This document shows positions 5,505 through 52,089 of a stretch of 64,000 bases of DNA, in pieces. Positions within the stretch are counted from its first letter, which is position 1; each line of letters begins with the position of its first letter. The notes under the pieces are model-generated. The model was given only the letters and a program-made list of their open reading frames with translations. It made no database searches and had not been told where the DNA came from. The stretch spans positions 186,001 to 250,000 of IMG/VR virus record IMGVR_UViG_3300048438_000153. One strand, given 5' to 3'. The position numbers and the translations under genes are program-made.

Positions 5505-5553
5505 ACCTCTTTATCTGTGGGCTTTACTTTACTCACAGATAAAGAGGTTATCA
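5505..5553 (-). promoter_or_regulatory. Late-promoter-like motif (5538-5553) with 15 bp RBS-sequestering hairpin
   Basis: TGATA-ACCTC-TTTATC. Perfect inverted repeat 5505-5519 / 5534-5548 covering AAAGAGGT before ATG 5497. Confidence 0.75.
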
Positions 5554-7472: not shown

Positions 7473-10400
7473 TCACCTCTTCTTCCCTACAATTCTATTT
7501 CTTAAGCTGTGTCGATCACTTCGACTAGGAGAGGGAGATCTGCGCCTCGCATCCGAACCGCCTCTTAATCGAGGTGATCCCGCGAAGCCTTTACCCCCAT
7601 GTAAAACAGTACCCCCTATTGATGATCTACCCGAACCGCCCGCAAAGTATTTCTGCTTACCCACTTGCTTAGAAGCGAGCCAAACCATACGAGTGAGCGC
7701 GTCCGACATATCATCGTGCTTGCCCTGAACTTGAGGCGCTTCTACTGTGACGATGTGCTTACTCTGAACCTTCGCTTGAAGCTCCAAGAGCTCCTGAATG
7801 TAAGGCTCATGTCCGTTCTCTTCAGGGTGAAGGTCATCATACAGCCTGAGCCTCTCATCCCACATCATATCCTTAAAATTCTGAAAGATTTGAGAGGTGA
7901 GTTGCTTTGTCATTTGAACGGACTTCATTTGACCTAAACCGCGCTTGGCGAGGGCTTGCTCAAGAGGTATGCCCGCCCATTGGTCAAAGATTCCCTCGAC
8001 TATGTAGAACTTCTTAGTGAGAGAAAGAATCCAATCAGCGACATCATCAAAGTCTAGCCTTTCTTTCTCAGCGTAGTCTCCTTCTCCCGCCTTTATCTGA
8101 ACTACAAGATCAACAACAATATCGTCCTCTTCTAAGTGACCAATAGCCACCGCCGTTCCGTCACCTACGAGCGCGAGGTCAATGCCCATGAAATGAGGCT
8201 GTCGAGCTGGCGCTTTCTGACGCGCTCTAAGCTTAGGGTCAACGCAAGCAAAAAGGTCTTCAGACTTCTCGATCCAACCTCTCGTTCTGTCTGTAAACTC
8301 ACCACCATACTCCGTAAAGAAAACAGCGGCGTTCTTAAGATAGTGTTTCTCGAACTCTTCAGCGGGGACAGTGGGATTGACCTCCCATGTAGGCGCTTGA
8401 ACTGCGAGGATGTTCTCACTCGCTCGACCACCTCTCATACCAATCTGAAAGAGGCTGTAGAAAAGACCCTGTTTACCTAGCGGAGAAGAGATCAGAATAA
8501 TTCGACCCTCAACCTCACCTATAGGCACAGTGGGGTTGTTGGGGTCTTTAGCTGAGTATGCTGAGGTCGAAGGCACAACCGCGTTATAGACCTCTTCCGC
8601 GCCCGACTGACCCGACTCTGTGAAGTGAGCCACCTCATCAAGAATAACGCAGATATTACCCGCACCACGCAAGCCCTTCGCCACGCACGATCTGAATGTG
8701 ACCTTGAGTGTAGCTTTCGCGTTAGAGTTCTCTATGTAACGACCGTATTTATCTACGTCATTGGGCGTCTGAAAGCGAGCGTAAGAAAGAGTGTTGTTCG
8801 CGGTGTATGGACCGAAGAAAGAGCAGTTTCTATAGTGTCCTGACACCTCTTGGTAGAGAAGACCCGCTTGGTCTTTGTCAGTCGCCACAGAGATAATCTG
8901 AATGTTGTTACTTGCGGGCAACCCGTAGTATTTCTGAGGGTCGCCTTTCTTGATCAACTTATACGTCTCATAAGCAGCGATACACGCAGAAATCGTGGTG
9001 TTGTGGTTTGTGAAGGCGTTCCCCACAAACATCGAGCCGTCAGGTACGTTGAGGTCATAAACAGGACTCCTCGACCTCTCAACAGAAACGATCTCGTCAA
9101 AGTAATACCCTGAGTCTAGGATCAAGTTAATCTTAGACTTGAGGTGATCAGAAACCTTATCCGAAGAGGCCACTCTGTGAAGGAGTGTCAGCGTGGGGGA
9201 CGTTGAAGACACCAATTTGCTAGATAAGCCCTTTCCCCTTAAGAAAGACCCGAACCCTTTTGGCGAGCAACTTTGGTCTTTAAGACCGTAGCCCAATCGT
9301 CTACTGAGCTTGTTAGCTCGCTCTTTCTTTTTTCTAGAAATGAACCCAATGTCGTCAAGAAACCTACGATAAGATTGAGTTCCCTTGAGAGACACCACAC
9401 CCTCCTCAAACCCCGAATACCTCCTACCAAATCGACGAGATGTGAAAACTCCCATGTTCATCAAGAGAATCTGAGCTTCTTTGAGTATGAGAGGAGAGGC
9501 TGAAGACAAGGAAATCTCACGCCCGCCCTTATCGGCAATATGACCATCTGTCTCGAAAAGACCCCGAAAGAAAGCGCATTGGACAGAGTAAGGGCTCTCT
9601 AGGATCGCGAAAGGGATTGTCTTAGTCTTGTAAACTACATCAACTCCCCAACCCAATCGCTGAAGAAAAGTCCTGATCTCTTTGCTGTATGTGTTCACTC
9701 TGTAAACACTACCCTCTCCCTCGATAACAGACACTTTTCCAAATAGAGAAACCATCTTTGAGACGAGGTAGTTCTTAAAGTCCTCACAACCTGTGGTGAC
9801 GCCCACCTTCTTCCCACTAGTCCAACCGCCGTCACCCACTAAAATACCGAGCATCTCCCCCCAATCCTCATCAAGATAGTCAGGGAGCTTGCTCTTCACA
9901 GAGAGGTCTTCCTTGTACTCTGAAAGAGGCACGTAATGCTCAGGGAAAAGACCTCTACTCTTGTTAAGACAAGCGAGATCACCCACCTGTATGTCTTCAA
10001 GGTACTTCCAAGATATGTTGTATTCCTTGTCGAGAACTTTAATCCTGTGGTTGGGCGTACCCTCTAACTCAAACCCCGAGTAGGTCATGATCTTCTTAGT
10101 CTCTTTGACGCCTCCGTTATAGAAGAAAGCCGTTTGCGCTGTAGCCCCTCCCTCTTGAAGAACTTGAACAGAGAGAGGCTGATATTCGGGCGCACCATGA
10201 GAAGCGTCTCCTAGTGAGTCGAGCCTCTTCATCCCACCAGGCGTGGGGATCAGAGTATCACCTGTGACACACTTACCTGAGCGCCTTCCGATTGAAAGTA
10301 TCATCTCTCGGCGCTGTTTTCCGGGGATAACCTCTCCGACGTTACAACGACCCTCGTCGTAGAGTTTCTTAAGGTACGTCTTTTCTGTGTGTACCTCAAT

Positions 10401-10607
10401 GTTCTCTCTACGCCAATCAGAAATCTCAAAGGTATTTACATCATCGAGTTCAAGCCCATAGTGTACTTTCAGAATGACCCTCTGCACAGGAAAGAGCTTC
10501 ATCTTCAAGCCCCAAGGAGACTCAACAAACTCGATGATGTCTACGTTCTTCGTAGACTGTTTCCCCGCTCTCGCTGAGGCAGATATTGCTAATGATGAAA
10601 AAGACAT
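7473..10607 (-). CDS. terL: Terminase large subunit, intein-containing
   Basis: Walker A GRRSGK|T split by the intein, Walker B CVILDE, coupling motif ISSP, RNase H-like nuclease MGIDLA...HDDMSDA. Confidence 0.95.
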   Translation of the reverse strand: MSFSSLAISASARAGKQSTKNVDIIEFVESPWGLKMKLFPVQRVILKVHYGLELDDVNTFEISDWRRENIEVHTEKTYLKKLYDEGRCNVGEVIPGKQRREMILSIGRRSGKCVTGDTLIPTPGGMKRLDSLGDASHGAPEYQPLSVQVLQEGGATAQTAFFYNGGVKETKKIMTYSGFELEGTPNHRIKVLDKEYNISWKYLEDIQVGDLACLNKSRGLFPEHYVPLSEYKEDLSVKSKLPDYLDEDWGEMLGILVGDGGWTSGKKVGVTTGCEDFKNYLVSKMVSLFGKVSVIEGEGSVYRVNTYSKEIRTFLQRLGWGVDVVYKTKTIPFAILESPYSVQCAFFRGLFETDGHIADKGGREISLSSASPLILKEAQILLMNMGVFTSRRFGRRYSGFEEGVVSLKGTQSYRRFLDDIGFISRKKKERANKLSRRLGYGLKDQSCSPKGFGSFLRGKGLSSKLVSSTSPTLTLLHRVASSDKVSDHLKSKINLILDSGYYFDEIVSVERSRSPVYDLNVPDGSMFVGNAFTNHNTTISACIAAYETYKLIKKGDPQKYYGLPASNNIQIISVATDKDQAGLLYQEVSGHYRNCSFFGPYTANNTLSYARFQTPNDVDKYGRYIENSNAKATLKVTFRSCVAKGLRGAGNICVILDEVAHFTESGQSGAEEVYNAVVPSTSAYSAKDPNNPTVPIGEVEGRIILISSPLGKQGLFYSLFQIGMRGGRASENILAVQAPTWEVNPTVPAEEFEKHYLKNAAVFFTEYGGEFTDRTRGWIEKSEDLFACVDPKLRARQKAPARQPHFMGIDLALVGDGTAVAIGHLEEDDIVVDLVVQIKAGEGDYAEKERLDFDDVADWILSLTKKFYIVEGIFDQWAGIPLEQALAKRGLGQMKSVQMTKQLTSQIFQNFKDMMWDERLRLYDDLHPEENGHEPYIQELLELQAKVQSKHIVTVEAPQVQGKHDDMSDALTRMVWLASKQVGKQKYFAGGSGRSSIGGTVLHGGKGFAGSPRLRGGSDARRRSPSPSRSDRHSLRNRIVGKKR
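9000..10271 (-). mobile_element. Intein (424 aa) with LAGLIDADG homing endonuclease
   Basis: Starts CVTGDT, block B GTPNHRI, LAGLIDADG motifs LGILVGDG and FRGLFETDG, ends VYDLNVPDGSMFVGNAFTNHN followed by Thr. Confidence 0.95.
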
Positions 10608-16569: not shown

Positions 16570-16768
16570 GCCTACCTTCTTTCTCAGGCTATTGTTAGAA
16601 CAGCTTTAATATAAAGAACCTAGTGACCCACCCAAATCGGTCGCCCAAAACCGAGCATCTCAACAAAATCTGAGAAATAGTTATCTGCCTGAGTGCTCCT
16701 AATAGGAAAGTAAGTCTTTAGTGGATTTATCCGCACCTAGAGGTATCTACGGAAAGGAACACTCAGGT

Positions 16769-18052
16769 ATGCGAAAAGCTGTCATGATAGATACGTCTGT
16801 ACTCATCCATGAACCGACCTCTTTCTTAGAGTTCGTTGACGAGTACGAAGTCTTGATCCCGATCTATGTCATCATGGAACTCGACTTACTCAAGGATAAG
16901 AAAGTCCAAGTCTCCCACCTCGCGAGAAGGTCAAGTTCTCTCATTCTCTCTGAAGTGGATAAAGGGGGGGTAAAGATCGTCTCGCACACAGACGAACTCG
17001 ACTTCGAGTCTCTTCAGAAAGCTGTAGAGGTCAGATATGTCGATCTCCTCATCTTGAAAACCGCTGAGAAATACAACCACGATTATGAGCAATTCTTATT
17101 ACTCACGAAAGACGTAAACTTGAGGATATTATCTGAGTGCGCGGGCATAGACTCAGAGGACTACATCAACACAAAAACCTCAGAGCGCGTTCTTTCTGAG
17201 ACAACCATCGAGGTGAGCCCGAGCATTGGGCTCAGGGCAAAGATGGCTAAGTCTTATTGGGAGGGCGCGGTGCGCCTCAACGAAGAAGAGATTGAAGAGC
17301 TTGGCCTGTTCAATAATCAGTACGTCACACTCACTGATCAGAAGCAGTCTAACCACCTCTTCCACTACAAAGACTACACTCTCTTCCCTATTAAGAAGAA
17401 GGAGGTGAGGGCAGGTAGAATCAAGCCCCGAAACCTTGAACAGACGATTGCCCTTGATCTCCTACTTAATCAAGAGATCAAGCTCGTCGCGCTCTTAGGG
17501 AAAGCGGGTACAGGAAAGACCTTCCTGACCCTCGCGTCGGCGCTCTTTCAGGCATCTACCTATCAGAGAATCTTACTCTCCAAGCCTGTTGTGGATGTCG
17601 GAAAAGGCATTGGTTTCTTACCAGGCTCTGTAGGTGAGAAACTAGAGCCTTGGATGCAGTCTTTCTTCGACAACCTTGATCAGATTAACCCTTATTGGGA
17701 AGTCGGGTCGAACGAGGAAGAAAGAGAGAGCTATTTCGAGAAAAACCACATCGAGATTCAGCCGATCAACTCAATCCGAGGGCGCTCTCTTAAAGACGCT
17801 TTCATGATCATCGACGAGGCACAAAACCTCACCAAGCACGAGATCAAGAGTATCATTACGAGAGCTGCTGAAGGTACGAAAGTCGTGCTGTTGGGCGACC
17901 CCTATCAGATCGACAACCCTTACCTAGACGAGAAGTCTAACGGACTGATATACGTCGTAGAAAAGATGAAGGGTCAGGGCATATTTGGTTATACGTCTCT
18001 CTCTAAGTCTGAGAGATCTGAGCTTTCTGACATAGCCGCTGACCTTCTCTGA
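16769..18052 (+). CDS. phoH: PIN-PhoH family ATPase (PhoH2/YlaK-like)
   Basis: N-terminal PIN (IDTSVLIH...ELD...VD...TKDVNLR), GKAGTGKT, GFLPG, RGRSL, IIDEAQN, GDPYQID. Start moved to ATG 16769 after AAAGGA. Confidence 0.92.
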   Translation: MRKAVMIDTSVLIHEPTSFLEFVDEYEVLIPIYVIMELDLLKDKKVQVSHLARRSSSLILSEVDKGGVKIVSHTDELDFESLQKAVEVRYVDLLILKTAEKYNHDYEQFLLLTKDVNLRILSECAGIDSEDYINTKTSERVLSETTIEVSPSIGLRAKMAKSYWEGAVRLNEEEIEELGLFNNQYVTLTDQKQSNHLFHYKDYTLFPIKKKEVRAGRIKPRNLEQTIALDLLLNQEIKLVALLGKAGTGKTFLTLASALFQASTYQRILLSKPVVDVGKGIGFLPGSVGEKLEPWMQSFFDNLDQINPYWEVGSNEEERESYFEKNHIEIQPINSIRGRSLKDAFMIIDEAQNLTKHEIKSIITRAAEGTKVVLLGDPYQIDNPYLDEKSNGLIYVVEKMKGQGIFGYTSLSKSERSELSDIAADLL

Positions 18053-18646: not shown

Positions 18647-19390
18647 CTATTCAAGACTAGGGATCTTGCCATGCTTAACGTAGTTGGCGTGAGCTATAGG
18701 CCATAGAGATTGAATCTGACGACTAATCTCCCTCGCTAAGAGTTTGATTTCCCACTGAGCATCCGCATGATCTCTCTTGGCTATGAAAGAATTCATCCAA
18801 TTATGGAGAGAGCCTGTTGCCCAATAAGTCGTATAGATATTCTGAGGGAGGATCATGCGCGCCTGTTCTCTAGCCACTCCCTGACCTATCATCTTATTGT
18901 AGAGCTTCACAGAGTCTGCGGTATGGTTTTTGATAGCAGACACAGCGTCTAGCCTTAAGAACTTAGGGTAGTCAAAAGCTTCAAACTCTATCGTTGGATT
19001 GAAAGTCTCGTCTAGGCTCGCCTGACGATTCTTAGTGTCCTGCTCCCTAAGCGCAGATGGGAAGTAAAACTCAATGTCTGCGGAGGTGTATCTCCGTGAG
19101 ATCTCATTGTAAGAGAAAGTCCTATGGCGCATCTGTTGGCGAGCGACAAAGAGCGGAACTTTAATCCAAAAAGTTACCACATTGTGCTCGCTTGTAGATG
19201 TATGACCCTCCCGAATGAGAAAGTTGGAGAGACGCTCCTCCTTTTCTCCCATTTCCGTACTGACCTGACCCAAACTAGCTCGCGCTGAGTTAACGAGGGT
19301 TAAATCATCACCCATACTCTGAATAAGAGCAACCCCACCGATACCGTCGTCGTAGATATCTACTTTATTCTCTCTGAAGTCCATTCTCAC
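18647..19390 (-). CDS. thyX: Flavin-dependent thymidylate synthase
   Basis: ThyX motif RHRTFSYNEISRRY, plus HTSTSEH, REQARMILP and HADAQWEI. Confidence 0.96.
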   Translation of the reverse strand: MRMDFRENKVDIYDDGIGGVALIQSMGDDLTLVNSARASLGQVSTEMGEKEERLSNFLIREGHTSTSEHNVVTFWIKVPLFVARQQMRHRTFSYNEISRRYTSADIEFYFPSALREQDTKNRQASLDETFNPTIEFEAFDYPKFLRLDAVSAIKNHTADSVKLYNKMIGQGVAREQARMILPQNIYTTYWATGSLHNWMNSFIAKRDHADAQWEIKLLAREISRQIQSLWPIAHANYVKHGKIPSLE

Positions 19391-19438: not shown

Positions 19439-20293
19439 TTAGCGACTAAACCTGTTGTATCGCCTTTGCTTTCTAACCCTTGCGCGTTGCCTACTCTGCT
19501 GAGTACGAGGCTTCCTAAGAGTTCTCCTCATCTTCTTGGTGCGGTTTTTAAGACCACTTCCCTTAAGAGCTTTTCTTAAGCCCTTACCAATAGCTCGGCG
19601 CACAGACGACTTGAGAGGACCTCTCCTCTTTCCTGACATGATCTCGTCAGCCAAGACCATAAGATCCTCTGCGAGTAGCTCTGCTTCTTTATCTGAAGCA
19701 GTGCGGTCAGTGCTCAAATCTGAAAAAAAAAAGTCCTCTGAAGCAACGCGATCAAGACCGATATCATCAATGATCTCATCATCGTAGAAAGAAGCCCTAC
19801 GATTTTTCATCGCTTGATAAAAATAATGATTATGACTCTTAGGTTGCTTCTCCTCAAGATCCATCAATTCCATCTCCTCTTCGCGAGTGAGCATGCCCTT
19901 TGATTTCTGACGGTTAAGATGCATAAGCCTGTGGGCAATGTTACCCTTAATTCTCGGGTCGCGCCTCTCAGCGGGAGTTTGGTATCCGAATCCAGCAACG
20001 CGATCAAGACCGATATCATCAATGATCTCATCATCGTAGAAAGAAGCTTTCTTACCAAGCTGACCAAGAGCTGAGATGTCTTCTTTGTCGTTACCCATGT
20101 TTTTCTTAATACGGTCTTGACTCATCTCGCCCGTTGAAGGATCGAAAGCACCCTCGTACTTATCCCAATCTTCTGCGGCTTCAGGGTTTTTCTTCTTAAA
20201 GTTCTTCTTCCACTCTTCGTAAGCTTTAGTGTCACCTTTAGGGATGCGAGCTTCTTTCTGAAACTCACTAGCGATGCGATCAAAAATATCCAT
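19439..20293 (-). CDS. Putative internal head protein with Arg-rich C-terminus
   Basis: 284 aa. Many [KR]xAS motifs, protamine-like tail, late motif at 20340-20355. Confidence 0.6.
   Translation of the reverse strand: MDIFDRIASEFQKEARIPKGDTKAYEEWKKNFKKKNPEAAEDWDKYEGAFDPSTGEMSQDRIKKNMGNDKEDISALGQLGKKASFYDDEIIDDIGLDRVAGFGYQTPAERRDPRIKGNIAHRLMHLNRQKSKGMLTREEEMELMDLEEKQPKSHNHYFYQAMKNRRASFYDDEIIDDIGLDRVASEDFFFSDLSTDRTASDKEAELLAEDLMVLADEIMSGKRRGPLKSSVRRAIGKGLRKALKGSGLKNRTKKMRRTLRKPRTQQSRQRARVRKQRRYNRFSR
19742..20047. repeat. Exact 54 bp direct repeat (19742-19795 and 19994-20047)
   Basis: Both copies encode ASFYDDEIIDDIGLDRVA. Confidence 0.95.
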
Positions 20294-20352: not shown

Positions 20353-20865
20353 TTAAGCCTCATCTTCATCCTCGAAGTCGATTTCTATTTTTTCGGGCTT
20401 ATCTGTCTTCTTAATGGGGTCTATCCAATCCTGAACTACGCCTTTTAACTGCACCTGATCTTCCGTCTTTGTCTTAATGACGGACTGCCCACTAAAGACA
20501 GAGAGCTTCTCAATCACGGCTGACTGAAGCTCGAATATCTGCTCTCTGAGGAGTTGCATCTGTATCTGAGCATCTCTTAACCGAGCGATCAGCGCAGCTC
20601 TGTCTCCGTTTGCTGAGGCGAGCTTATCTTTCAGCTCTTCGACCTCACTAGGATCGCGCCCCGAAGCTATCGCGAGCATACTAGAAATAGAGCCTGTCAG
20701 CATCCCGATGATGCCGATAAGAATATCTCTATTCTTCTCCACTATTTCGTGGGTAGATAGAAAGTAGATAAGAACGCAGATCAGGAACATGAAGACTACG
20801 CTCGCCCACCACCCTCTCTTCGCTTTCTCACTCTGAGTGAACTGTTTATGTGAACCTTCTGACAT
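20353..20865 (-). CDS. Two-TM membrane protein with C-terminal coiled coil
   Basis: Hydrophobic segments WWASVVFMFLICVLIYFL and ILIGIIGMLTGSISSMLAIA, then heptad-rich EVEELKDKL...LREQIFELQ. Confidence 0.75.
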   Translation of the reverse strand: MSEGSHKQFTQSEKAKRGWWASVVFMFLICVLIYFLSTHEIVEKNRDILIGIIGMLTGSISSMLAIASGRDPSEVEELKDKLASANGDRAALIARLRDAQIQMQLLREQIFELQSAVIEKLSVFSGQSVIKTKTEDQVQLKGVVQDWIDPIKKTDKPEKIEIDFEDEDEA

Positions 20866-20869
20866 GATT

Positions 20870-21724
20870 CTACCCCTTAATTATCTTGATCAGATCTTGC
20901 CACACATAGACAAGGAAAGCATAAGTCTCGTCTACAACAGGCATATAGAGGGGGAGCCCTAGAAACATATTTCTAGCCATAGGGCGCACTATAATCTGAA
21001 AGAGTATGTAAATCCAAAATACTGAAGCGATGAATGCTACTCTCCAAAAGACCCAAGCCACCCATTCTTTCAGCTTTCTGTCCCTAGCCCTCGACCTGAT
21101 GTACTTCGGACCTCCGAGCCTCTTTACTTTCTCGGAACTCTTAGGAGGCTGAAGAGACTCAATAGACTCCCCCACTGCAAATATTTTCTGAGGCTTCTTC
21201 ACGCCCTTAAATCGGTAAAGACCGACACAGACGTACCTAGTACCTTTAGGAGTGTGTATATTTACTCTCCCTCTCGTCTTTCCCATAGCCTCTTCAGTCA
21301 AAAGCACTTGGCCTTCCGCGCACACACTCATCGTCCTCGCGGCGATATTCTTAGCTAGACCCTCTAGCTCAATCCTCTTAGCACCCGCCCCTACAAAGAC
21401 ATCATCCTGTTGAACCTCGATGACGCGCCCCCAATGGATTCCGATCCTCGTCTGTAGACGAGTCTTAGGAGGCACTTTCTTTTGGTAATGAAGGGCGAAG
21501 TTGACCGCATCTATAATGGTGTCGAAAGAAAGGAGAAACCCGTCAGACCTGTCAATCTCGCGACCGTTGAACTTGTAGCACAAGCTCCTCGCGAGTCGGT
21601 CATGGAACTGAAACCACTGAGCCGCTTTCTGTGCGCCGTATTTCTGAACAAACGCAGTTGAACCAATGATGTCCAAGAGGACTATGGCTAAGTACCTCTC
21701 TTTCATCGTCAATTCGTAGTTCAA
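20870..21724 (-). CDS. Class III nucleotidyl (adenylate/guanylate-type) cyclase with C-terminal membrane anchor
   Basis: LLDIIGST and SDGF metal Asp residues, RIGIHWG, NIAART (N/R), GQVLLT, FKG, then a hydrophobic C-terminal helix. Confidence 0.88.
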   Translation of the reverse strand: MNYELTMKERYLAIVLLDIIGSTAFVQKYGAQKAAQWFQFHDRLARSLCYKFNGREIDRSDGFLLSFDTIIDAVNFALHYQKKVPPKTRLQTRIGIHWGRVIEVQQDDVFVGAGAKRIELEGLAKNIAARTMSVCAEGQVLLTEEAMGKTRGRVNIHTPKGTRYVCVGLYRFKGVKKPQKIFAVGESIESLQPPKSSEKVKRLGGPKYIRSRARDRKLKEWVAWVFWRVAFIASVFWIYILFQIIVRPMARNMFLGLPLYMPVVDETYAFLVYVWQDLIKIIKG

Positions 21725-21960
21725 GGGATCTCTCCCCTGATGTATCTAAGTACAGCGTCGCACTCTGAGTTTAAGATAAGCTCAGCCGATTCTCTACTAC
21801 AAGAGCCCAAAGGAACTCGCGCGCCGAGACAGAAAGTTATCTTGTCTACGACTTGCTCACAAAGCGGTTTAACTTCTTTCGGAGTTAAGTCTGCCTCTTC
21901 CGCACACGCAGAAAGAGTGATCACAGAGGCGACTGCGGTCAGTATCATCTTTTTCATCAT
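21721..21960 (-). CDS. Small Cys-rich lipoprotein
   Basis: AGGAGG RBS, signal peptide MMKKMILTAVASVITLSA-C with lipobox, four further Cys, ATGA overlap with the cyclase start. Confidence 0.75.
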   Translation of the reverse strand: MMKKMILTAVASVITLSACAEEADLTPKEVKPLCEQVVDKITFCLGARVPLGSCSRESAELILNSECDAVLRYIRGEIP

Positions 21961-22072
21961 CGCCCTCCTGAGCGCCATCAAGAGTGTCCTCACAGTAGAA
22001 GCATACGTCCAGAGAGGGATCGACACATCTACAGTTAGGGTACTGAGGCTTTGTATTTACGGTATCGGACAC
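21869..22072 (-). CDS. Possible small Cys-rich acidic peptide
   Basis: GTG start just after the upstream stop; CRC...CFYC. Overlaps the lipoprotein gene by about 90 nt. Confidence 0.3.
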   Translation of the reverse strand: MSDTVNTKPQYPNCRCVDPSLDVCFYCEDTLDGAQEGDDEKDDTDRSRLCDHSFCVCGRGRLNSERS

Positions 22073-22077
22073 GGTAA

Positions 22078-22620
22078 TTAGACCTTAAGAGGATCGCCAT
22101 TAGGGTCAAAAAGACGCTCAATCTCAAACTCTCCGCCCTCACCTACTTTCACAGACCAAAGGTCTTTTGTAGACTTGTGTACGAGCTCGCCTGTAGCATT
22201 CGCATTTGAAGCGCCAAAGGCGGTTAAGAGAGACGGACCTGAGAGGATGATGAAGTCATCTAGACTAGCCACCCTCATCGAAGCTACTCTGAGAAAGTTG
22301 ACGCTCACACGGTCAATCTTATCCCCCCTACCATCCCACTGAACGAACACCTCTCCGTCCATAGACGTGACCTCACCCGAAGCAGTGCGAACCTTAACAA
22401 CAGATCCCTTTCTACCCGCCATAGGAAGCCTATTTGGGATTAAGAGTCCATTGTTGGTAGTAGAGACTACTCTAACGCCCTCAGTGAACTTAGCGAGCCT
22501 CTTAGACGTGACTGTTCGGTTAACGTCAACTAAGTCTGAGACTTTGGTGTTAATCACCTCGTCCATGCTTGCGGTCTTTTGAGCACTCGCAAACATATCA
22601 TTGAGCCATGAATCACTCAT
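22078..22620 (-). CDS. Putative virion protein (SH3-like beta domains)
   Basis: 180 aa with KTAS/RTAS/RVAS motifs. Late motif and RBS hairpin at 22619-22676. Confidence 0.6.
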   Translation of the reverse strand: MSDSWLNDMFASAQKTASMDEVINTKVSDLVDVNRTVTSKRLAKFTEGVRVVSTTNNGLLIPNRLPMAGRKGSVVKVRTASGEVTSMDGEVFVQWDGRGDKIDRVSVNFLRVASMRVASLDDFIILSGPSLLTAFGASNANATGELVHKSTKDLWSVKVGEGGEFEIERLFDPNGDPLKV

Positions 22621-22672
22621 AATACCCCTCTTTCTTTTCTGTGTACCTAAGAAAGAAGGATTATAAACAATT

Positions 22673-22720
22673 AAGCGAACCTAGAAAGGTTCTTGAGTTA
22701 GAAGCTAACTAGATTCGCTT
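22673..22720 (-). terminator. Long hairpin downstream of ssb (terminator or processing site)
   Basis: AAGCGAATCTAG...CTAGGTTCGCTT, 12 bp stem with one G-U pair, followed by AATTGTTT. Confidence 0.45.
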
Positions 22721-35307: not shown

Positions 35308-38300
35308 TTACTCCTTGTCTTCAAACTCTGAGGCGGTCTGATAGTCGCCCTCGTCCATGAACTTCTCCCTGATGAGGGAGTTTCTTTCTACTGACTTAGC
35401 GACCGAAAGCCAAGCTTCTTCAAGAATGACGTCGCTCTTTCTCATGAGGTCTGTCAGCGCGTCCCTCTCTCTCTCAGGGCTTAAGAGTTTACTGAAGCCC
35501 TTTGACTTGAGTTTGAGCTTCTCGATAGTGCCAACGTCAGTCATCGAGCGCACATTGTCGTTTGAGTAGTAGGCGATCTTAAACTCGTTAGAGTAGGTCG
35601 AAATCGCCTCTAGTACGTCCTGTGCAGACCTTCTGCTCATGTAAGACTCCCAACATGAAGCGTCATCTACGTCGAAGGGCTCAGAGGGGCGCTTCAGGTA
35701 ATCTGAAAGACCCATCTCAAACTCGTTGCACTTCATCTTGAAATACACGTTGAGTACGCGCTGTGCTACGTCGCTATCGTTCAGAGAAAGAGACATCCTC
35801 TTGAGCGGAGTCCCATTCGCAGACCACCACCTCTGACCGATGAGCTCAGTCTTGTTATCGTCAGTACAGAGGAAGAGGTCAGACAAGCTAACCTCATTTC
35901 CGTTTCGGATGCGATCATTGTCTACGAGCCAATCTTTAATCGCGATCTCCTCCTTAGAAAGCACCTCATGATCAAGATCGAGGAAGTCAATCTGAATGTC
36001 TGAGCTGAAGCCGAGAGAAGGCAAGGTCATAAGGTCACTGCTGTCCATGTCGGCCTTGATAGAAGACACATTCTTATCTGCTCTCGCGCTCACAATCTGA
36101 CCGAAGATGAGCCTCGAAGGAACGTCCGAAGGCAGACACTTAGAGAAAGAAAGAGCCTTATTGTAGATCGTCCTCGTCATGTCGAGATTTTCTTCAACGA
36201 AGACCTCAAGGTTGATGTCCTCACTCTGAGAAAGAACATGACCCTCTTCAATGATCGCGAAGTCATCGTCTGACGTGAACTGATAAGAAACAATCGAAGA
36301 GAGCCCCGTGAGATCTGAGACTCTCCTAGCTTCAGAGGGGTCTTTTGATTCTTGAATTACAGAAGAGAACAGAGGATCTGACCTGAAGCGAGAGGGGTCG
36401 AGCGCGAGATACTTAAGTGGGTTCTCGTCCTCGTTCTCAAGGGCCTCTGAGACATCTTTGATGTTACTAGCAGAGGGGTCGAGGAGCATCGAGACAAGAT
36501 TCTTATTGATCCTGATCGACTCACCTGTAGTCCTCTCAACGCTATCGTAGTCTGCGATCAGATCAGTCTCCATGCCCTTTCTGATGATGTCCATGAAGAA
36601 GTCCTGATCCGCGCCCTGAATCAAGTCTTTCATCTCATCAATGGTCATGTCCATAGCGTCTTTTCCAAAAGCAGATGCTTTGTCTGAGTCGCCATAGCCT
36701 GAAGTCCTATCGCCACCCTTAGCGATCACCGCGTCAAGGTAGATAACCTCTACTTGCTTGTTTTGACCTGTGCGGTATGCGCGCGCTGTCCTCTGCTTAA
36801 CAAGCTCAGAGTCAAAACCCTCACCGCGATCAAGGTGAACCACCGTTCCGATGAACTGAAAGTTGAAGCCCTTCGCGTACTCGTCGGTGCAACTGATCGA
36901 CTTGATGCTTGGGTTGTCTTTAAAGATCATCTTAGTAGCGGAAATAGCCCACTGCTCGGAAACGAAAGCGAAGACGCCATTAGGGTTGAAGTAAACTTTC
37001 TTAAGAGCGTTCCTTGAAGACTTGACCCTCTTCACATCCTTATCGGTGAGAGCCTTGAAGAGATCGTTGAAAGGAGTCTCAATAACCTCTTTCTCCTCTT
37101 CCTCAAGTACGCTGTCATACTTGTTGAGGTTGAACTCTACGAGCTCGAAAAGATCCTGAACCTCCTCCCTAAACTCTTCTCCCGCTTTTGGGTGAGCATT
37201 TAAGAAAGAATAGTCTACAAGCCTACGCTCAAGTGCAGATAAAGACGCGAACCTACGACTGTCAAGGTTGACCCTAGAAAGCTCAGTCTTCCCTGTGTCT
37301 TTCTTGATCGCGCCGATATTCTTACCCGCTCGATAGAACTCGATGGAGTCCCTACGGAGCGCGACGTGAACACCGCCAACGCCCGACTTACTGCACTTAA
37401 CTGCGTTCTGTCTGACGATAGTCTGATCTGCTGAGAAATAACACACCGCCTTCCCCGGCCTGTCCATCAAGATTTTCTCAGCTTGATCGAGCTTCGGGTT
37501 AGGCACTTTCTCATTGAAATACTTTGAGGGGTTCGTGGTCAGGGTGATGAGATCCCTGATCTTGGAGACACTCTTAGCTTGAGCGAAGTCCACGATGTTC
37601 TTGAAAGAGGACTCCTGATACTTGCCCCCTTTCTTAATTACGTCTCTGTACTTCTTGACCATCGCCTTAAGCTCGCGAGCGAGTGCTCCTGAGAGCTTGC
37701 GGTACTCTTTCTCGACGCGCTCGTTGAGCCGAACTGTGATGACTTGTGAAGTGGGCTTCTGAAGCTTAGGGAGTCCGATTTCTTCAAGATTCACGTCCTG
37801 TTTGAAAGCGAAATAAGCGTTCGCCTTGACCCATGTGTTGAACTCTTCGCGAGTTCCTTTCTTAAGGCCGACGAATCGACCGCCGATGACGTTCCCGAAT
37901 CTCTCAGCGAAAGCTCTTTCCTTCTCTGCTGAGAACTCCGCGCCCCTCGCGACTGCGACGAACCTGTAAAGGTCGAGTGGATCTCTCTCCATCGCAGAAG
38001 CTGTGAGAAGAATCTTACGAGGGTGCTTCAGGTCAGAGAGAGCCTTTCTCTTAGTTCCTGTGAGCGCCTCATTGACTTCATCAAAGAAACAGATCGCGTA
38101 TTTGTCTTTGAAGTACTCAGTAGAGTCAGCGTAGTTGCTACCCATCTCAGGCTTAGAGGGGTCTTTCCAATAGTCTGAAGGGATATCCCTGAGCCTACGC
38201 TCCCTCTTCTTCGGGTCTTTCTCAGCGAGGAACTCCTCAACGCGGTCGATGCCTCTGACAATCTTAGCGAACTTGGTGTAGTTCATCTCGTAGATGCGGT

Positions 38301-40521
38301 TATCTACGACGCCGTGATCAGTCATGAAGTCTTTCATTTCTCTTGAGAAGTTACCTTGCAGTCTCTTCGGAGAAACGAACAAGAATTGTTTCTCAGATCC
38401 AGGAGCTTCTTTGGTCTTCATGTAGTGGCGCATAGCACCGCCCGCCAAGAGAGTCTTACCCACACCTGTGTCGAGAGCCATTAGACCTGAGTATGCGTTC
38501 GCCTCAAGCCAAGCCATCGCCTCCATCTGCTTGTTGTTGAAACGGAAAGGACGCCCCTTAAACTCTGAGACGAATCCTCCGATAGCATCGGGAGTGAATT
38601 TCTTAAGGTTCTCTTCATTGAGAGCGCGGTCACGAGCTGTGAGCTCACGGTAGTACTCGTCAAGGTAGTCAAGAGCAGGCTTAGAAACAGCGCATGAGCC
38701 GAGCGTGTCTCTAATCGACTCGTAAGCAGATGGGTCGAAGTAATAGAAAGGGTTCAGACCGTTCACAGTGGGAGCGAGTCTAGGGTCTTTCTTCTGCTCG
38801 ATGGAAGGCTTCATAATCTTAGCAAGATCTTTGATCGCGTTGCGGTCTTGCTTGCTCGCGTTAGAGCTAGGGATGCCAAGAACGAGTCTCTTCTTGTTCG
38901 CAGAAAGAGTGATATAGGGCTCTCTTAAGCGGTTATTCACGACCTTCATGTACTTGGCGCGCGCAGAGCCTTCGCCAAGATCAAGGAAGCTAACCTCTTC
39001 ACCGTCAGGTACGAGATCGCCTACCTCATTTCTTACAAAGTCACCCTCGATCATCTCGATCTTCTGAGTTTCTCCATCTGCGGTGCGCGTGTAGAAGCTA
39101 CCCTCGATGAGACGGCCTGAAGCATTGACGAGATCTTCTAAGAGAAAGCCTTTATATTGACCCTCAACGATCACGTCAACCATCGTGTCGCCAACGATCA
39201 TCTTCTTAACTTTAACTACACGAGTCAGCGCCCTCTTTGAACTACCCTTCGCATCTGTGAGCTGAGCTGTCCTCATATCCCCTGAAAGAGCGGAGACGTC
39301 ATAGCGAGTGAGAGGGAAACTCTCTTCAGCGCCCTCATAGGTAATCTTAGAAAGGTACTCATAGACAGGAGTCTCCTGAAAGACATCCTCGCCCTCATAT
39401 CCCTTTGGCTGACGCTTCTTTACTTTCTTAACGCCGACCTGAATACGCTCTTCTTCGATTGTAGGCATCTGATTGAAGAGAGCCATTTCCTTTCCGATTC
39501 GGCTCTCGAACGCCTCCTCGTAATCATCTTTCGAGGAGAACATCTGATAGTCTGAAGTCTCCTCATCCACCAAGTATGGAGAGTAGATTCCCTTGATGAA
39601 GGGCTCAAGCCTCTCCTCATAGGCTTTCATCGCCTTCTCGTACCCACTCGCCTCTACGCGCGCCTCATATGACTCCCGCGACTCTCCTCTTCTCTTAGAT
39701 GGTCTGCGAGGTGGCTTACCTAGTGACTTTACTTGAGGGTCATAAGCGACTGTAGCAGTCTTAGCGCCACCGACGCCGAGGTAGTCTCTAGTCTTTCCTA
39801 CGACAAAACCCTGTTGCTCAAGTGTCGTCTCAAGCTCTTTCTGCTGAATGTCGAAAGCTCTCTTAAGAACATCATATTCCTCAGTATCATCTTTCGAGGA
39901 CTTGTTGAGCGCGCTCTCAAGGCTTGAGGGAAGAGCGAACTGAATATAGGGGAGATTGACGGAGCTGTTTCTTTTCTGCTTCGTAGACACCTCAATCCCC
40001 ATCAGTTTGAAGACACGTCCAAGGAGATCAGAGTAATTCTCAACAAGGCGGTTCTTGTAGGTCGCTTTTCTGACATACTTTCTGATGCGCCTGATGCGGT
40101 CATCTACAGGAGTGTTGATCTCTGAGGTTTCACGGATGAATTTCTCGAAGTCCTCGATCTCAGCTCTCATTCTCTGAGTGTCTTGGATGAAAGACTCCGA
40201 CATCTCGCTTGCGAACTTTCTACGGAGGTACTTAGTACCCTCATCGAACTTATCCACGAGAAGGATATTGTAGTTCTTAAACCTGTCGGCTTTCGCCAAG
40301 ATTTTAAGCATGAACTCGTTAGGCGTGATGAGGTGAGTATATACCGTAAAGAGCGCGTCGATCTCTTTGCGACGAACGGCGATAAACACTCGATCCTCAA
40401 GACCTTTTTCCTTTCTCTCTAAGATTTCCTCCTCAGAGAGCTTACGCCTCTTACCATAACGCCTCTTAACAACATCTGTAAGGCGACCCCTAAAAGGGAT
40501 GACTGTCTGCCTGTTCTTCAT
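35308..40521 (-). CDS. Large SNF2-family helicase/translocase, probably virion-associated
   Basis: KQMEA (Q), ALDTGVGKT (I), FFDEVNE (II), LLTAS (III), KGFNFQ (V), QRTARAYRTGQ (VI). Late motif at 40578-40593. Confidence 0.85.
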   Translation of the reverse strand: MKNRQTVIPFRGRLTDVVKRRYGKRRKLSEEEILERKEKGLEDRVFIAVRRKEIDALFTVYTHLITPNEFMLKILAKADRFKNYNILLVDKFDEGTKYLRRKFASEMSESFIQDTQRMRAEIEDFEKFIRETSEINTPVDDRIRRIRKYVRKATYKNRLVENYSDLLGRVFKLMGIEVSTKQKRNSSVNLPYIQFALPSSLESALNKSSKDDTEEYDVLKRAFDIQQKELETTLEQQGFVVGKTRDYLGVGGAKTATVAYDPQVKSLGKPPRRPSKRRGESRESYEARVEASGYEKAMKAYEERLEPFIKGIYSPYLVDEETSDYQMFSSKDDYEEAFESRIGKEMALFNQMPTIEEERIQVGVKKVKKRQPKGYEGEDVFQETPVYEYLSKITYEGAEESFPLTRYDVSALSGDMRTAQLTDAKGSSKRALTRVVKVKKMIVGDTMVDVIVEGQYKGFLLEDLVNASGRLIEGSFYTRTADGETQKIEMIEGDFVRNEVGDLVPDGEEVSFLDLGEGSARAKYMKVVNNRLREPYITLSANKKRLVLGIPSSNASKQDRNAIKDLAKIMKPSIEQKKDPRLAPTVNGLNPFYYFDPSAYESIRDTLGSCAVSKPALDYLDEYYRELTARDRALNEENLKKFTPDAIGGFVSEFKGRPFRFNNKQMEAMAWLEANAYSGLMALDTGVGKTLLAGGAMRHYMKTKEAPGSEKQFLFVSPKRLQGNFSREMKDFMTDHGVVDNRIYEMNYTKFAKIVRGIDRVEEFLAEKDPKKRERRLRDIPSDYWKDPSKPEMGSNYADSTEYFKDKYAICFFDEVNEALTGTKRKALSDLKHPRKILLTASAMERDPLDLYRFVAVARGAEFSAEKERAFAERFGNVIGGRFVGLKKGTREEFNTWVKANAYFAFKQDVNLEEIGLPKLQKPTSQVITVRLNERVEKEYRKLSGALARELKAMVKKYRDVIKKGGKYQESSFKNIVDFAQAKSVSKIRDLITLTTNPSKYFNEKVPNPKLDQAEKILMDRPGKAVCYFSADQTIVRQNAVKCSKSGVGGVHVALRRDSIEFYRAGKNIGAIKKDTGKTELSRVNLDSRRFASLSALERRLVDYSFLNAHPKAGEEFREEVQDLFELVEFNLNKYDSVLEEEEKEVIETPFNDLFKALTDKDVKRVKSSRNALKKVYFNPNGVFAFVSEQWAISATKMIFKDNPSIKSISCTDEYAKGFNFQFIGTVVHLDRGEGFDSELVKQRTARAYRTGQNKQVEVIYLDAVIAKGGDRTSGYGDSDKASAFGKDAMDMTIDEMKDLIQGADQDFFMDIIRKGMETDLIADYDSVERTTGESIRINKNLVSMLLDPSASNIKDVSEALENEDENPLKYLALDPSRFRSDPLFSSVIQESKDPSEARRVSDLTGLSSIVSYQFTSDDDFAIIEEGHVLSQSEDINLEVFVEENLDMTRTIYNKALSFSKCLPSDVPSRLIFGQIVSARADKNVSSIKADMDSSDLMTLPSLGFSSDIQIDFLDLDHEVLSKEEIAIKDWLVDNDRIRNGNEVSLSDLFLCTDDNKTELIGQRWWSANGTPLKRMSLSLNDSDVAQRVLNVYFKMKCNEFEMGLSDYLKRPSEPFDVDDASCWESYMSRRSAQDVLEAISTYSNEFKIAYYSNDNVRSMTDVGTIEKLKLKSKGFSKLLSPERERDALTDLMRKSDVILEEAWLSVAKSVERNSLIREKFMDEGDYQTASEFEDKE

Positions 40522-52031: not shown

Positions 52032-52040
52032 ATCGAACTC

Positions 52041-52089
52041 CTTTATATGTCTCTCTTCTTTCTCCAAGAGACATATAAAGACTTAATCA
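52041..52089 (-). promoter_or_regulatory. Late-promoter-like motif (52074-52089) with 14 bp RBS-sequestering hairpin
   Basis: Perfect inverted repeat 52041-52054 / 52067-52080 pairing the AAAG of the RBS for the fibre gene. Confidence 0.75.

What the first reader, a model, noticed from the sequence alone, without database searches (positions are those of the whole stretch)
20353..22072. Phage-encoded lipoprotein + membrane-anchored class III nucleotidyl cyclase + 2TM coiled-coil protein: candidate cyclic-nucleotide signalling module
Seen: three tightly coupled genes (ATGA overlap at 21721-21724, 4 nt gap at 20866-20869) downstream of the late motif at 22662. They encode a lipobox lipoprotein with four extra Cys, a cyclase keeping both metal Asp residues and the N-x-x-x-R pair with a C-terminal TM, and a 2TM protein with a long coiled coil. 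The base-selecting positions are non-canonical (EIDRSDG in place of VKxxGD; IELEG in place of the Asp/Thr site), so the product may not be cAMP. From memory, IDRSDG and EGLAK match the cyclase domain of the xanthomonad 'putative peptide modification system cyclase' family; this needs confirming. Known: cyclase plus TM effector is the layout of Pycsar/CBASS-type defence. Inference: an envelope sensor-cyclase-effector unit for superinfection exclusion, lysis timing, inter-phage conflict or host second-messenger manipulation.
Basis: partly seen in the sequence, partly recalled or inferred. Interest (0 to 1): 0.82.

Follow-up and report, generated by a model that had tools for sequence, protein, structure and literature searches.

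The report
Phage membrane cyclase with conserved partner
An uncultivated marine jumbo phage carries a membrane-anchored, apparently active nucleotide cyclase that is almost always encoded beside one highly conserved two-helix membrane protein, so these phages probably run their own cyclic-nucleotide signal at the host membrane, for a purpose not yet known.

Summary
The three genes are real, on the minus strand: a lipoprotein (21721-21978), a tail-anchored class III cyclase (20870-21724) and a 2TM coiled-coil protein (20353-20865). The cyclase passes Pfam's threshold, and its model superposes on the Rv1900c cyclase domain (TM 0.88-0.92). It keeps both metal Asp, the Asn/Arg pair and a phosphate Lys in over 100 relatives. 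The base-selecting positions are non-canonical but invariant (Asp52, Glu113).

The conserved unit is two genes, not three. Of 93 distinct cyclase loci, 91 have the 2TM gene within 2.5 kb, and 99 of 100 2TM loci have a cyclase. Synonymous sites are saturated, so both genes are under strong purifying selection. The lipoprotein occurs only in one subclade. Other phages have a 12-Cys mini-protein or nothing at that position.

The cassette is absent from cultured phages and from 185,579 species genomes. It matches no PADLOC model and its partner has no cNMP-binding domain, so it is not Pycsar or CBASS. The 2TM protein shows a consistent sub-threshold SLATT signal.

Best reading: a phage-private cyclic-nucleotide switch acting on the inner membrane. 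Function is unproven.

The parts
20870..21724 (-). Tail-anchored class III nucleotidyl cyclase. It is 284 aa from TTG 21724 and 278 aa from ATG 21706. The cyclase homology domain covers residues 1-200 and the conserved basic juxtamembrane segment about 185-212.
   Evidence: Pfam Guanylate_cyc scores 25.7 bits against a gathering score of 21.9. NCBIfam TIGR04510 N-terminal domain, E 7.4e-44. AF2 pLDDT is 84, and Foldseek matches Rv1900c CHD at TM 0.88-0.92, rmsd 1.7 A. At least 714 homologues exist.
21542..21673 (-). Stretch holding the catalytic acidic residues: metal Asp D12 (21671-21673), invariant D52-R53-S54-D55 (21542-21553). D55 is the second metal Asp and D52 sits at the canonical substrate-Lys position.
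   Evidence: Invariant in alignment A1 of 25 sequences. Kept in divergent subfamilies. Positions mapped by HMMER alignments to Rv1900c and Ma1120.
21335..21370 (-). Second active-site stretch: E113 (at the canonical Asp/Cys base-selecting position; Asn in a sister subfamily), E115, N120 and R124 (the transition-state pair).
20996..21070 (-). C-terminal transmembrane helix of the cyclase (about residues 213-237). It is followed by a periplasmic tail of about 40 aa with a weakly conserved P-x2-R-x4-G-L-P motif.
   Evidence: AF2 gives a continuous helix over residues 200-240. The segment is hydrophobic with a polybasic stretch before it.
20353..20865 (-). 2TM plus coiled-coil partner protein (170 aa). 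TM1 is about 20755-20811, TM2 about 20659-20724, and the long cytoplasmic helix about 20494-20652. The C-terminal tail is acidic and variable.
   Evidence: AF2 helices 11-38, 43-67 and 72-124. At least 1545 homologues at 52-100% identity, with 63 invariant columns. It lies adjacent to a cyclase in 99 of 100 loci. SLATT_fungal matches sub-threshold in 22 of 23 members.
21721..21978 (-). Small secreted lipoprotein: signal peptide, lipobox L-S-A-C, acidic +2/+3 residues and four conserved Cys. It is an accessory gene found only in a subclade.
   Evidence: lipoprotein signal-peptide hits. Family alignment A3 has the lipobox Cys and four further Cys invariant. It lies upstream of the cyclase in about 15-18 of 101 loci and was found only next to cyclases.
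22078..22620 (-). 180-aa gene of unknown function. It lies between the promoter-like site and the cassette and is probably in the same transcription unit. It is not part of the conserved cassette.
   Evidence: Homologue upstream of the cyclase in only a few related contigs (L028, L041, L042). No family assignment.
22660..22670 (-). Promoter-like TTGTTTATAAT in the 138-nt intergenic region, preceded by a hairpin at 22677-22692.
   Evidence: There is a single exact copy. A looser T-C-T-T-T-A-T-like motif recurs upstream of many genes, seen by eye and not tested.

Best explanation
The conserved unit is a two-gene membrane signalling cassette of uncultivated marine (mostly jumbo) phages. This genome adds an accessory lipoprotein.

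Shown. The cyclase is a catalytically competent-looking class III nucleotidyl cyclase held on the cytoplasmic face of the inner membrane by a C-terminal TM helix. It is co-inherited with one extremely conserved 2TM protein whose long coiled coil most likely also faces the cytoplasm; that topology rests on the positive-inside rule only.

Inferred mechanism. The cyclase dimerises in the plane of the membrane and makes a 3',5'-cyclic mononucleotide of unknown, possibly non-cAMP, base. This acts as a phage-private signal on the 2TM partner. The partner is a SLATT-like, glycine/serine-zipper hairpin that oligomerises to permeabilise or de-energise the inner membrane. This would give the phage an enzymatic switch for a membrane event, either lysis timing or shutdown on superinfection. 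The invariant basic juxtamembrane segment of the cyclase and the invariant acidic segment after TM2 of the partner are the likely contact. The 4-Cys lipoprotein, where present, is a periplasmic add-on: an input to the short periplasmic tail, or an independent exclusion protein.
For: Cyclase identity and intact catalytic set.

Obligate pairing: the 2TM gene lies within 250 nt in 84 of 93 distinct loci and within 2.5 kb in a further 7. Of 100 2TM loci, 99 have a cyclase. Pairing survives gene-order inversion (L044, L152), inserted genes (L015, L083, L129) and replacement by a cyclase subfamily only about 41-45% identical, whose partners stay 62-82% identical (most 73-82%) to the window's.

Selection: both genes are under strong purifying selection. 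dS is saturated while dN is 0.15-0.6.

Distant branch: tail-anchored cyclases at 38-46% identity again have a start/stop-overlapping TM plus coiled-coil partner.

Partner features: SLATT_fungal is the top recurrent Pfam match, in 22 of 23 members with best E 8.8e-4. TM2 has a small-residue zipper and is invariant.

Private signal: the base-selecting residues are non-canonical but invariant, which fits a private messenger rather than host cAMP.

Distribution: absent from 185,579 species genomes and from 50,697 phage records, but present in at least 20 seawater metagenome runs.
Against: The partner has no recognisable nucleotide-binding domain, and its model has no structural neighbour. The SLATT signal stays below Pfam's threshold, comes from closely related sequences, and covers hydrophobic helices that are prone to compositional matches.

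The sister cyclase subfamily changes E113 to Asn while keeping nearly the same partner. That is odd if residue 113 sets the base and the partner reads it.

The partner is more conserved than the enzyme, which is unusual for pore-forming effectors and holins. It could instead reflect binding to a conserved host membrane protein.

The cassette usually lies among nucleotide-metabolism genes such as ThyX and dCMP deaminase, not lysis genes. No expression data exist.
Confidence: 0.4

Rival explanations
1. Host second-messenger takeover. The cyclase floods the infected cell with cAMP, cGMP or another host-readable cNMP to reprogramme host metabolism or envelope genes. The 2TM coiled-coil protein is not an effector. 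It acts as the membrane scaffold or activator that sets cyclase dimerisation, like the TM plus coiled-coil transducer that precedes the catalytic domain in canonical membrane cyclases, but supplied in trans.
For: The partner is a TM segment plus a long coiled coil with no ligand-binding domain. A non-homologous TM plus coiled-coil partner fills the same slot in the distant branch (hhalign probability 8.5%), so the architecture is conserved rather than a particular pore. The cassette sits with early/middle-type metabolic genes: ThyX in 58 fetched loci, also dCMP deaminase and RNR. The closest solved relatives are adenylyl cyclases.
Against: The substrate-selecting Lys/Asp of adenylyl cyclases is replaced by invariant Asp/Glu. 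The extreme conservation of TM2 is not explained by a scaffold role, because the cyclase's own TM helix is poorly conserved. The host, and hence any host receptor, is unknown.
Confidence: 0.27
2. Lysis cassette. The 2TM protein is a class II-type holin (or, in the distant branch, the 1TM coiled-coil protein is an i-spanin) and the lipoprotein is an o-spanin or similar. The cyclase is either a lysis regulator or merely a neighbour.
For: The distant-branch partners hit PHROG 'Rz-like spanin' families (phrog_739, E 1.2e-7 to 4e-3). The window's lipoprotein and 2TM protein give weak spanin and holin/antiholin PHROG hits (E 0.026-0.095). The 2TM protein has holin-like size, N-in/C-in hairpin topology, a small-residue zipper and a charged tail.
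Against: The only recognisable endolysin in the window (Amidase_2, 57465-58415) is 35 kb away. The lipoprotein is absent from most cassettes. Charge distribution places the coiled coils in the cytoplasm, not the periplasm as a spanin requires. The PHROG hits are to TM plus coiled-coil composition. Holins are normally poorly conserved, unlike this protein.
Confidence: 0.15
3. A phage-borne abortive or exclusion system of Pycsar/CBASS logic. The cyclase fires when a competing phage superinfects, and the 2TM effector then kills or seals the cell. The lipoprotein acts as a Cor/Llp-like receptor blocker.
For: The two-gene cyclase plus TM-protein layout matches PycC/PycTM and PucC/PucTM (bioRxiv 10.64898/2026.08.12.744502). 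There is a sub-threshold SLATT signal and a weak Cor-family PHROG hit on the lipoprotein (E 0.0054).
Against: No PADLOC model matches any of the three proteins. Pycsar cyclases are not among the sequence or fold neighbours. The effector lacks the CNBD that defines PycTM/PucTM. Core-like conservation and saturated dS are unlike fast-turnover defence cargo. The Cor hit covers only the signal peptide.
Confidence: 0.1
4. The cyclase domain is a non-catalytic structural or binding module (a pseudoenzyme), and the pair has a purely structural membrane role, for example in virion assembly or the injection apparatus.
For: One distant homologue lies inside a baseplate gene cluster, between Phage_base_V and GPW_gp25. 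The related bacterial TIGR04510-type domains have never been assayed, to my knowledge.
Against: Every catalytic residue of the class III set is invariant across subfamilies down to about 40% identity. That is not expected of a pseudoenzyme.
Confidence: 0.05

Closest known systems
Class IIIc mycobacterial adenylyl cyclase domains (Rv1900c/LipJ CHD, PDB 1ybt/1ybu; Ma1120, PDB 4wp9)
   Same: Same fold (TM 0.88-0.92, rmsd 1.7-2.5 A). Same two metal Asp, the Arg of the Asn/Arg pair, and dimer-type catalytic domain. They are the best sequence matches in the PDB.
   Different: Identity is only 22-25%. The phage protein has Asp/Glu at the base-selecting positions and lacks the partner domains of those enzymes. 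It is anchored by a C-terminal TM helix and is encoded by phages.
TIGR04510 'putative peptide modification system cyclase' and related large bacterial STAND/TPR/Ser-Thr-kinase proteins (Rubrivivax, other Burkholderiales, Xanthomonadaceae)
   Same: This is the closest cyclase-domain subtype. It shares the E-I-D-R-S-D-G-F and E-L-E-G-x-x-K-N motifs and is 34-46% identical over about 190 aa.
   Different: Those proteins are 800-1400 aa with AAA/TPR/kinase/WD40 regions, and they are soluble or differently anchored. The phage protein is the bare domain plus a TM tail. It scores 150 bits against the family cut-off of 400. No peptide-modification genes lie nearby.
Pycsar / Pucsar (PycC or PucC cyclase plus CNBD-TIR or CNBD-3TM effector)
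   Same: Two-gene logic of a class III-type mononucleotide cyclase next to a membrane protein, with non-canonical base selection.
   Different: There are no PADLOC PycC or effector matches. The partner has 2 TM helices and a coiled coil, with no CNBD and no pJV1-spdB3 3TM fold. The cyclase itself is membrane-anchored. The cassette sits in lytic-phage genomes as a conserved gene pair, not in bacterial defence islands.
SLATT-domain 2TM effectors of SMODS/SLOG conflict systems (CBASS-like)
   Same: A two-helix membrane hairpin followed by a cytoplasmic helical region, encoded next to a nucleotide-signal synthase. There is a consistent weak Pfam match in 22 of 23 members.
   Different: The score is below threshold (13.9 bits against 26.5). 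The synthase here is a class III cyclase, not a CD-NTase/SMODS.
Phage holins and spanins (class II holins; Rz/Rz1)
   Same: Small membrane proteins with charged tails, a TM plus coiled-coil protein next to a Cys-containing lipoprotein, and weak PHROG hits.
   Different: Not adjacent to the endolysin. The lipoprotein is dispensable across the family. The coiled coil is predicted to be cytoplasmic. Sequence conservation is extreme. The pair is obligately linked to an enzyme.

Membership tests
Class III nucleotidyl cyclase (Pfam PF00211) | Sequence match above the curated threshold | tested here: met
   25.7 bits against a gathering score of 21.9, residues 10-176.
Class III nucleotidyl cyclase (Pfam PF00211) | Cyclase homology domain fold | tested here: met
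   AF2 model with pLDDT 84. Foldseek to Rv1900c CHD gives TM 0.88-0.92 and rmsd 1.7 A, and 185 PDB matches have E <= 0.001; all 50 listed are class III cyclases.
Class III nucleotidyl cyclase (Pfam PF00211) | Two metal-binding Asp and the transition-state Asn/Arg pair | tested here: met
   D12, D55, N120 and R124 are invariant in 25 sequences and in divergent subfamilies. They were mapped through alignments to 1ybt and 4wp8.
Class III nucleotidyl cyclase (Pfam PF00211) | Canonical base-selecting pair (Lys/Asp for ATP, Glu/Cys-Ser for GTP) | tested here: not met
   Asp52 is at the Lys position. Glu113 (Asn in a sister subfamily) is at the Asp position. This pair sets specificity and is not required for family membership.
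Class III nucleotidyl cyclase (Pfam PF00211) | Forms a 3',5'-cyclic nucleotide | not testable with these tools
   Needs an enzyme assay.
TIGR04510 putative peptide modification system cyclase | N-terminal cyclase domain of this subtype | tested here: met
   E 7.4e-44, profile positions 7-204 of 814. Bacterial proteins with E-I-D-R-S-D-G-F are 34-41% identical.
TIGR04510 putative peptide modification system cyclase | Full-length architecture (about 800 aa with the C-terminal region), scoring above the 400-bit cut-off | tested here: not met
   150.4 bits. The protein is 278-284 aa, with only a TM tail after the domain.
Pycsar / Pucsar | Cyclase belongs to the PycC/PucC clade | tested here: not met
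   No PADLOC model matches at E <= 1. No Pycsar cyclase appears among the PDB sequence hits or the top 50 fold hits.
Pycsar / Pucsar | Effector carries a cyclic-nucleotide-binding domain fused to TIR or to a 3TM module | tested here: not met
   The partner is a 2TM hairpin plus coiled coil, with no cNMP_binding hit in 23 members.
Pycsar / Pucsar | Bacterial anti-phage defence locus | tested here: not met
   Found only on viral contigs up to 376 kb. None of 185,579 species genomes holds the phage-type cassette.
CBASS | CD-NTase (SMODS) signal synthase | tested here: not met
   The synthase is a class III cyclase. There are no PADLOC hits.
SLATT 2TM effector domain | Match to a SLATT profile above threshold | tested here: inconclusive
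   PF18142 scores 13.9 bits against 26.5 for the window protein, but it matches 22 of 23 family members at E <= 1 (best 8.8e-4) and is the most recurrent family. NCBIfam NF033635 gives E 0.14. No SLATT alignment was at hand for a profile-profile test.
Holin / spanin lysis cassette | Clustered with the endolysin | tested here: not met
   The Amidase_2 protein is at 57465-58415, 35 kb away, with no TM protein beside it. Only 64 kb of about 275 kb was visible.
Holin / spanin lysis cassette | i-spanin (N-in TM, periplasmic coiled coil) with an adjacent or embedded o-spanin lipoprotein | tested here: inconclusive
   Distant-branch partners hit Rz-like PHROGs (E 1.2e-7 to 4e-3). Against this, the lipoprotein is missing from most cassettes, is separated from the coiled-coil gene by the cyclase, and charge distribution favours a cytoplasmic coiled coil.

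The most novel reading that the evidence does not exclude
A globally distributed clade of uncultivated marine jumbo phages carries, as a near-core gene pair, its own private cyclic-nucleotide circuit. A membrane-tethered cyclase with an unusual base pocket makes a messenger, possibly not cAMP, that gates a SLATT-like 2TM protein. In this reading the phage uses the logic of bacterial abortive-infection systems as an enzymatic clock or trigger for inner-membrane permeabilisation, that is, a nucleotide-gated holin or exclusion switch.
Probability: 0.2. Interest if true: 0.88.

Novelty: new variant of a known kind. Interest (0 to 1): 0.72.

Why it matters
Cyclic-nucleotide signalling in phage-bacterium conflict is known almost entirely from the bacterial side (CBASS, Pycsar, Pucsar). 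Phages are known to contribute only nucleases and sponges that destroy or soak up the signal.

Here a signal synthase is a strongly conserved phage gene, tied to one dedicated membrane partner, in hundreds of marine viral contigs. It is absent from all cultured phages searched. If the enzyme is active, phages write cyclic-nucleotide signals as well as erasing them.

The finding also offers a tractable pair of small proteins for discovering a new messenger-effector relationship or a new way of timing lysis in jumbo phages. In addition, it gives the first biological context for the unassayed TIGR04510-type cyclase domain subtype.

Tried and rejected
1. The HMM score was -0.1, and 248 of 500 shuffles scored at least as high. 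The family has no member anywhere in the window. Rejected.

2. 'Late motif': there is a single exact copy and no enrichment. The sigma-70 scan was at background level.

3. PADLOC gave no hit for any of five proteins.

4. The cultured-phage collection gave no DNA match. The cyclase has one 26% hit in a faecal phage contig. The 2TM protein has none even at E 1.

5. The fold search of the 2TM model found no PDB match. Two ESM Atlas searches returned only its own viral clusters and chance-level named clusters.

6. Homology between the 2TM partner and the 1TM partner of the distant branch: hhalign probability 8.5%. I treat them as analogous, not homologous.

7. Expression data: no RNA run was listed as holding the cassette.

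8. Literature: searches for phage-encoded class III cyclases, for jumbo or huge phages with cyclases, for PF00211 with phage, and for the TIGR04510 name found nothing relevant.

9. A locus scan with the lipoprotein alignment failed for lack of a conserved stretch. The single-sequence scan found only contigs already known to carry the cyclase.

10. Complex prediction (cyclase dimer with partner and lipoprotein) could not be run, because the structure tool takes single natural sequences only.
Full report
**What is in the sequence**

On the minus strand of 20353-22026 lie three co-directional ORFs.

- The first is a small lipoprotein. Its frame opens at GTG 22026, and the likely starts are ATG 21978 (preceded by GAGGA) or 21960/21957. 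It has lipobox L-S-A-C, acidic residues just after the lipid Cys, and four further Cys.
- The second starts at TTG 21724. The first ATG is at 21706. Homologues carry the same short extension before M-K-E-R-Y-L, so the TTG start is likely.
- The third follows after a 4-nt gap (20866-20869).

A 180-aa gene (22078-22620) and a 114-nt spacer separate the cassette from the promoter-like TTGTTTATAAT at 22660-22670. That motif occurs once exactly and is not enriched. Nothing shows it to be late-specific.

**The genome**

The window belongs to a huge tailed phage. It encodes:

- a portal 69% identical to that of a 485-kb uncultured phage and 27% identical to that of phage G;
- a prohead protease, an intein-bearing terminase, RNR, ThyX, PIN-PhoH and a RecD-like helicase;
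- a sigma-like factor, a NusG/KOW-like protein and an Amidase_2 endolysin candidate.

An IMG/VR contig of 275,102 bp holds the identical cassette. The stretch occurs in at least 20 seawater or marine metagenome runs from many studies.

**The cyclase**

- It passes Pfam's curated threshold for Guanylate_cyc (25.7 against 21.9 bits).
- Its AlphaFold model (pLDDT 84) superposes on the Rv1900c and Ma1120 cyclase homology domains (TM 0.88-0.92, rmsd 1.7-2.5 A).
- HMMER alignments to those structures, with a 25-sequence family alignment, identify D12 and D55 as the metal Asp, N120/R124 as the transition-state pair and K167 in the phosphate-binding F-K-G motif. All are invariant.
- The base-selecting positions are unusual but also invariant. 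Asp52 stands where adenylyl cyclases have Lys, and Glu113 stands where they have Asp.
- After the domain comes an invariant basic juxtamembrane stretch, then one long TM helix and a tail of about 40 residues. The protein is therefore tail-anchored, with the enzyme in the cytoplasm.
- Exhaustive HMMER and a scan of 185,579 species genomes show where this subtype occurs in cells. It is otherwise the N-terminal or internal domain of 800-1400-aa STAND/TPR/kinase proteins of Rubrivivax, other Burkholderiales and Xanthomonadaceae (34-46% identity).
- No cellular genome holds the short phage form.

**The partner**

The 170-aa protein is a helical hairpin (helices 11-38 and 43-67) followed by a long helix (72-124) and an acidic variable tail. 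By the positive-inside rule both ends are cytoplasmic.

It is remarkably conserved. There are at least 1545 homologues. A 23-sequence alignment has 63 invariant columns, concentrated in TM2, which is rich in Gly, Ser and Thr, and in the first half of the coiled coil.

Pfam's SLATT_fungal model (the SMODS- and SLOG-associated 2TM effector domain) is the most recurrent match. It hits 22 of 23 members at E <= 1, best 8.8e-4, but always below threshold. There is no cNMP-binding domain. Neither the PDB fold search nor the ESM Atlas gave a useful neighbour.

**Co-conservation**

I fetched about 170 viral loci with either protein and scored them by tblastn.

- Among 93 distinct cyclase loci with at least 700 nt on both sides, the 2TM gene lies within 250 nt in 84 and within 2.5 kb in 7.
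- The two exceptions belong to a distant branch, described below.
- Among 100 distinct 2TM loci, 99 have a cyclase. L153 is the exception.
- Pairing survives inversion of gene order (L044, L152) and insertion of other genes.
- It also survives replacement of the cyclase by a sister subfamily. That subfamily is only about 41-45% identical, carries D-A-S-D-G-H and I-N-L-E-G motifs, and keeps all catalytic residues. Its partners remain 62-82% identical (most 73-82%) to the window's.
- Synonymous sites are saturated in nearly all comparisons while dN is 0.15-0.6. The conservation therefore reflects selection, not recent transfer.

In a more distant branch of tail-anchored cyclases (38-46% identity), the neighbour is instead an upstream 91-111-aa protein whose stop overlaps the cyclase start. 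It has one TM helix, a coiled coil and a Q-C-R-D-G-R-I-x-I-W-E motif. It is not detectably homologous to the 2TM protein (hhalign probability 8.5%). What recurs is the architecture: a membrane coiled-coil protein plus a tail-anchored cyclase.

**The lipoprotein**

It forms a coherent family, with the lipobox Cys and four further Cys invariant. It was found only next to cyclases. However, it precedes the cyclase in only about 15-18 of 101 distinct loci, all in one jumbo-phage subclade.

In about 25 other loci the upstream gene is an unrelated acidic 12-Cys mini-protein. Elsewhere the upstream gene is a terminase-like ATPase, a DNA methylase, dCMP deaminase or ThyX.

The lipoprotein is therefore an accessory, and the conserved unit is two genes.

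**Comparison with known systems**

The layout recalls Pycsar/Pucsar (cyclase plus membrane effector) and SMODS-SLATT systems, but membership tests fail.

- There are no PADLOC matches.
- No Pycsar cyclase is among the sequence or fold neighbours.
- The partner lacks the CNBD that defines PycTM/PucTM.
- The synthase is not a CD-NTase.
- The cassette is a conserved phage gene pair, not defence-island cargo.

A lysis-cassette reading gains some support from PHROG 'Rz-like spanin' hits of the distant-branch partners (E down to 1.2e-7) and from weak spanin/holin hits in the window. It is weakened in three ways. The only recognisable endolysin is 35 kb away. The lipoprotein is dispensable across the family. 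The coiled coils are probably cytoplasmic.

I found no paper describing such a phage cassette.

**Most likely mechanism**

Shown: a catalytically intact-looking cyclase, membrane tethering, obligate pairing and strong purifying selection.

Inferred: the enzyme dimerises on the inner face of the membrane and makes a cyclic mononucleotide. The invariant but non-canonical base pocket argues for a phage-private messenger. That messenger acts on the 2TM partner, which then changes inner-membrane permeability or energisation. This would serve as a switch for lysis timing or for a response to superinfection.

The main rival is that the partner is the cyclase's activator or scaffold and the product is read by host receptors. 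That reading fits the lack of a binding domain and the metabolic gene neighbourhood. It is also compatible with the E113-to-Asn change occurring without a change of partner.

I put the effector model at about 0.4, host takeover at 0.27, a lysis cassette at 0.15, a phage-borne exclusion or abortive system at 0.1 and a pseudoenzyme at 0.05.

**Verdict**

The finding is a real, widespread and uncharacterised phage cassette. It is best filed as a new variant of cyclase-plus-membrane-partner signalling systems, with a phage-side origin that a specialist would find surprising. Simple enzyme and co-expression assays would decide between the models.

Noticed in passing
L008:3270-3437, L042:4783-4971, L130:3902-4114, L170:4032-4202 and about 20 further loci: A family of small (55-95 aa) acidic proteins with 12 Cys in CxC/CxxC pairs is encoded directly upstream of the cyclase in many related phages. 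It occupies the slot that the lipoprotein fills in this window. It has no Pfam or PHROG match and no member in the window.
   Followed up: partly
It does not match the 12-Cys family above chance and is probably not a gene.
   Followed up: yes
window 19439-20293 (-): The 284-aa product of the gene just downstream of the cassette contains an exact 18-residue internal repeat (starting at residues 83 and 167) and an extremely basic Arg/Lys-rich C-terminal tail. The length of the repeat region differs between two otherwise identical contigs (L005 and L006). It has no family match.
   Followed up: partly
window 7473-10607 (-); also L001:9300-12425: A 1044-aa ORF carries an intein with a LAGLIDADG homing endonuclease domain. 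I read it as the large terminase from gene position and from memory of similar phage genes, not from a family match. The same arrangement is conserved in a 360-kb relative.
   Followed up: no
window 57465-58415 (-): An Amidase_2 (N-acetylmuramoyl-L-alanine amidase) protein, the likely endolysin, lies 35 kb from the cassette with no obvious holin beside it.
   Followed up: partly
window 35308-40521, 41057-46471, 46533-52067 (-): Three consecutive giant ORFs (1737, 1804 and 1844 aa). The translation of the third (46533-52067), the only one I read, shows many internally repeated segments, such as repeated T-T-A-Y-V-D-A-Q-I-D-T-D and L-S-A-F-x-R-T-L-L-D-D-A stretches. They are probably fibre or adhesin-like virion proteins.
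   Followed up: no
L034 (start of IMGVR_UViG_3300033182_000980) and L234 (its end): In this 375,691-bp contig the lipoprotein gene lies at the very end and the cyclase at the very start. This suggests a circularly closed or terminally permuted complete genome.
   Followed up: no
L019:4328-7788 and L020: A distant tail-anchored cyclase (46% identity) with its 1TM coiled-coil partner sits inside a contractile-tail baseplate cluster, between a Phage_base_V spike gene and a GPW_gp25 gene.
   Followed up: partly
L153:4992-5444: This is the single locus where the 2TM gene has no cyclase within reach. It is flanked by a 404-aa protein of unknown function and, on the other strand, a 551-aa protein; neither was assigned to a family.
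   Followed up: partly
58 of the fetched loci; window 18647-19390: ThyX lies within 5 kb of the cassette in 58 fetched loci (duplicates included), and dCMP deaminase is the direct upstream neighbour in several. The cassette travels with pyrimidine-metabolism genes.
   Followed up: partly
window, upstream of genes ending at 5536, 15271, 16569, 27992, 29940, 52067, 56976 and others: A loose motif (C/G)-T-(C/G)-T-T-T-A-T-(A/C) recurs 20-70 nt upstream of many minus-strand genes, including both head-region and RNR genes. It may be a phage promoter element. It was seen by eye and not tested statistically.
   Followed up: no
window 16721-18052 (+), 53605-54174 (-), 54167-54703 (-): The window also encodes a PIN-PhoH fusion protein, a sigma-70 region-4-like protein and a NusG/KOW-like protein. 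The last two suggest phage-encoded transcription factors.
   Followed up: no
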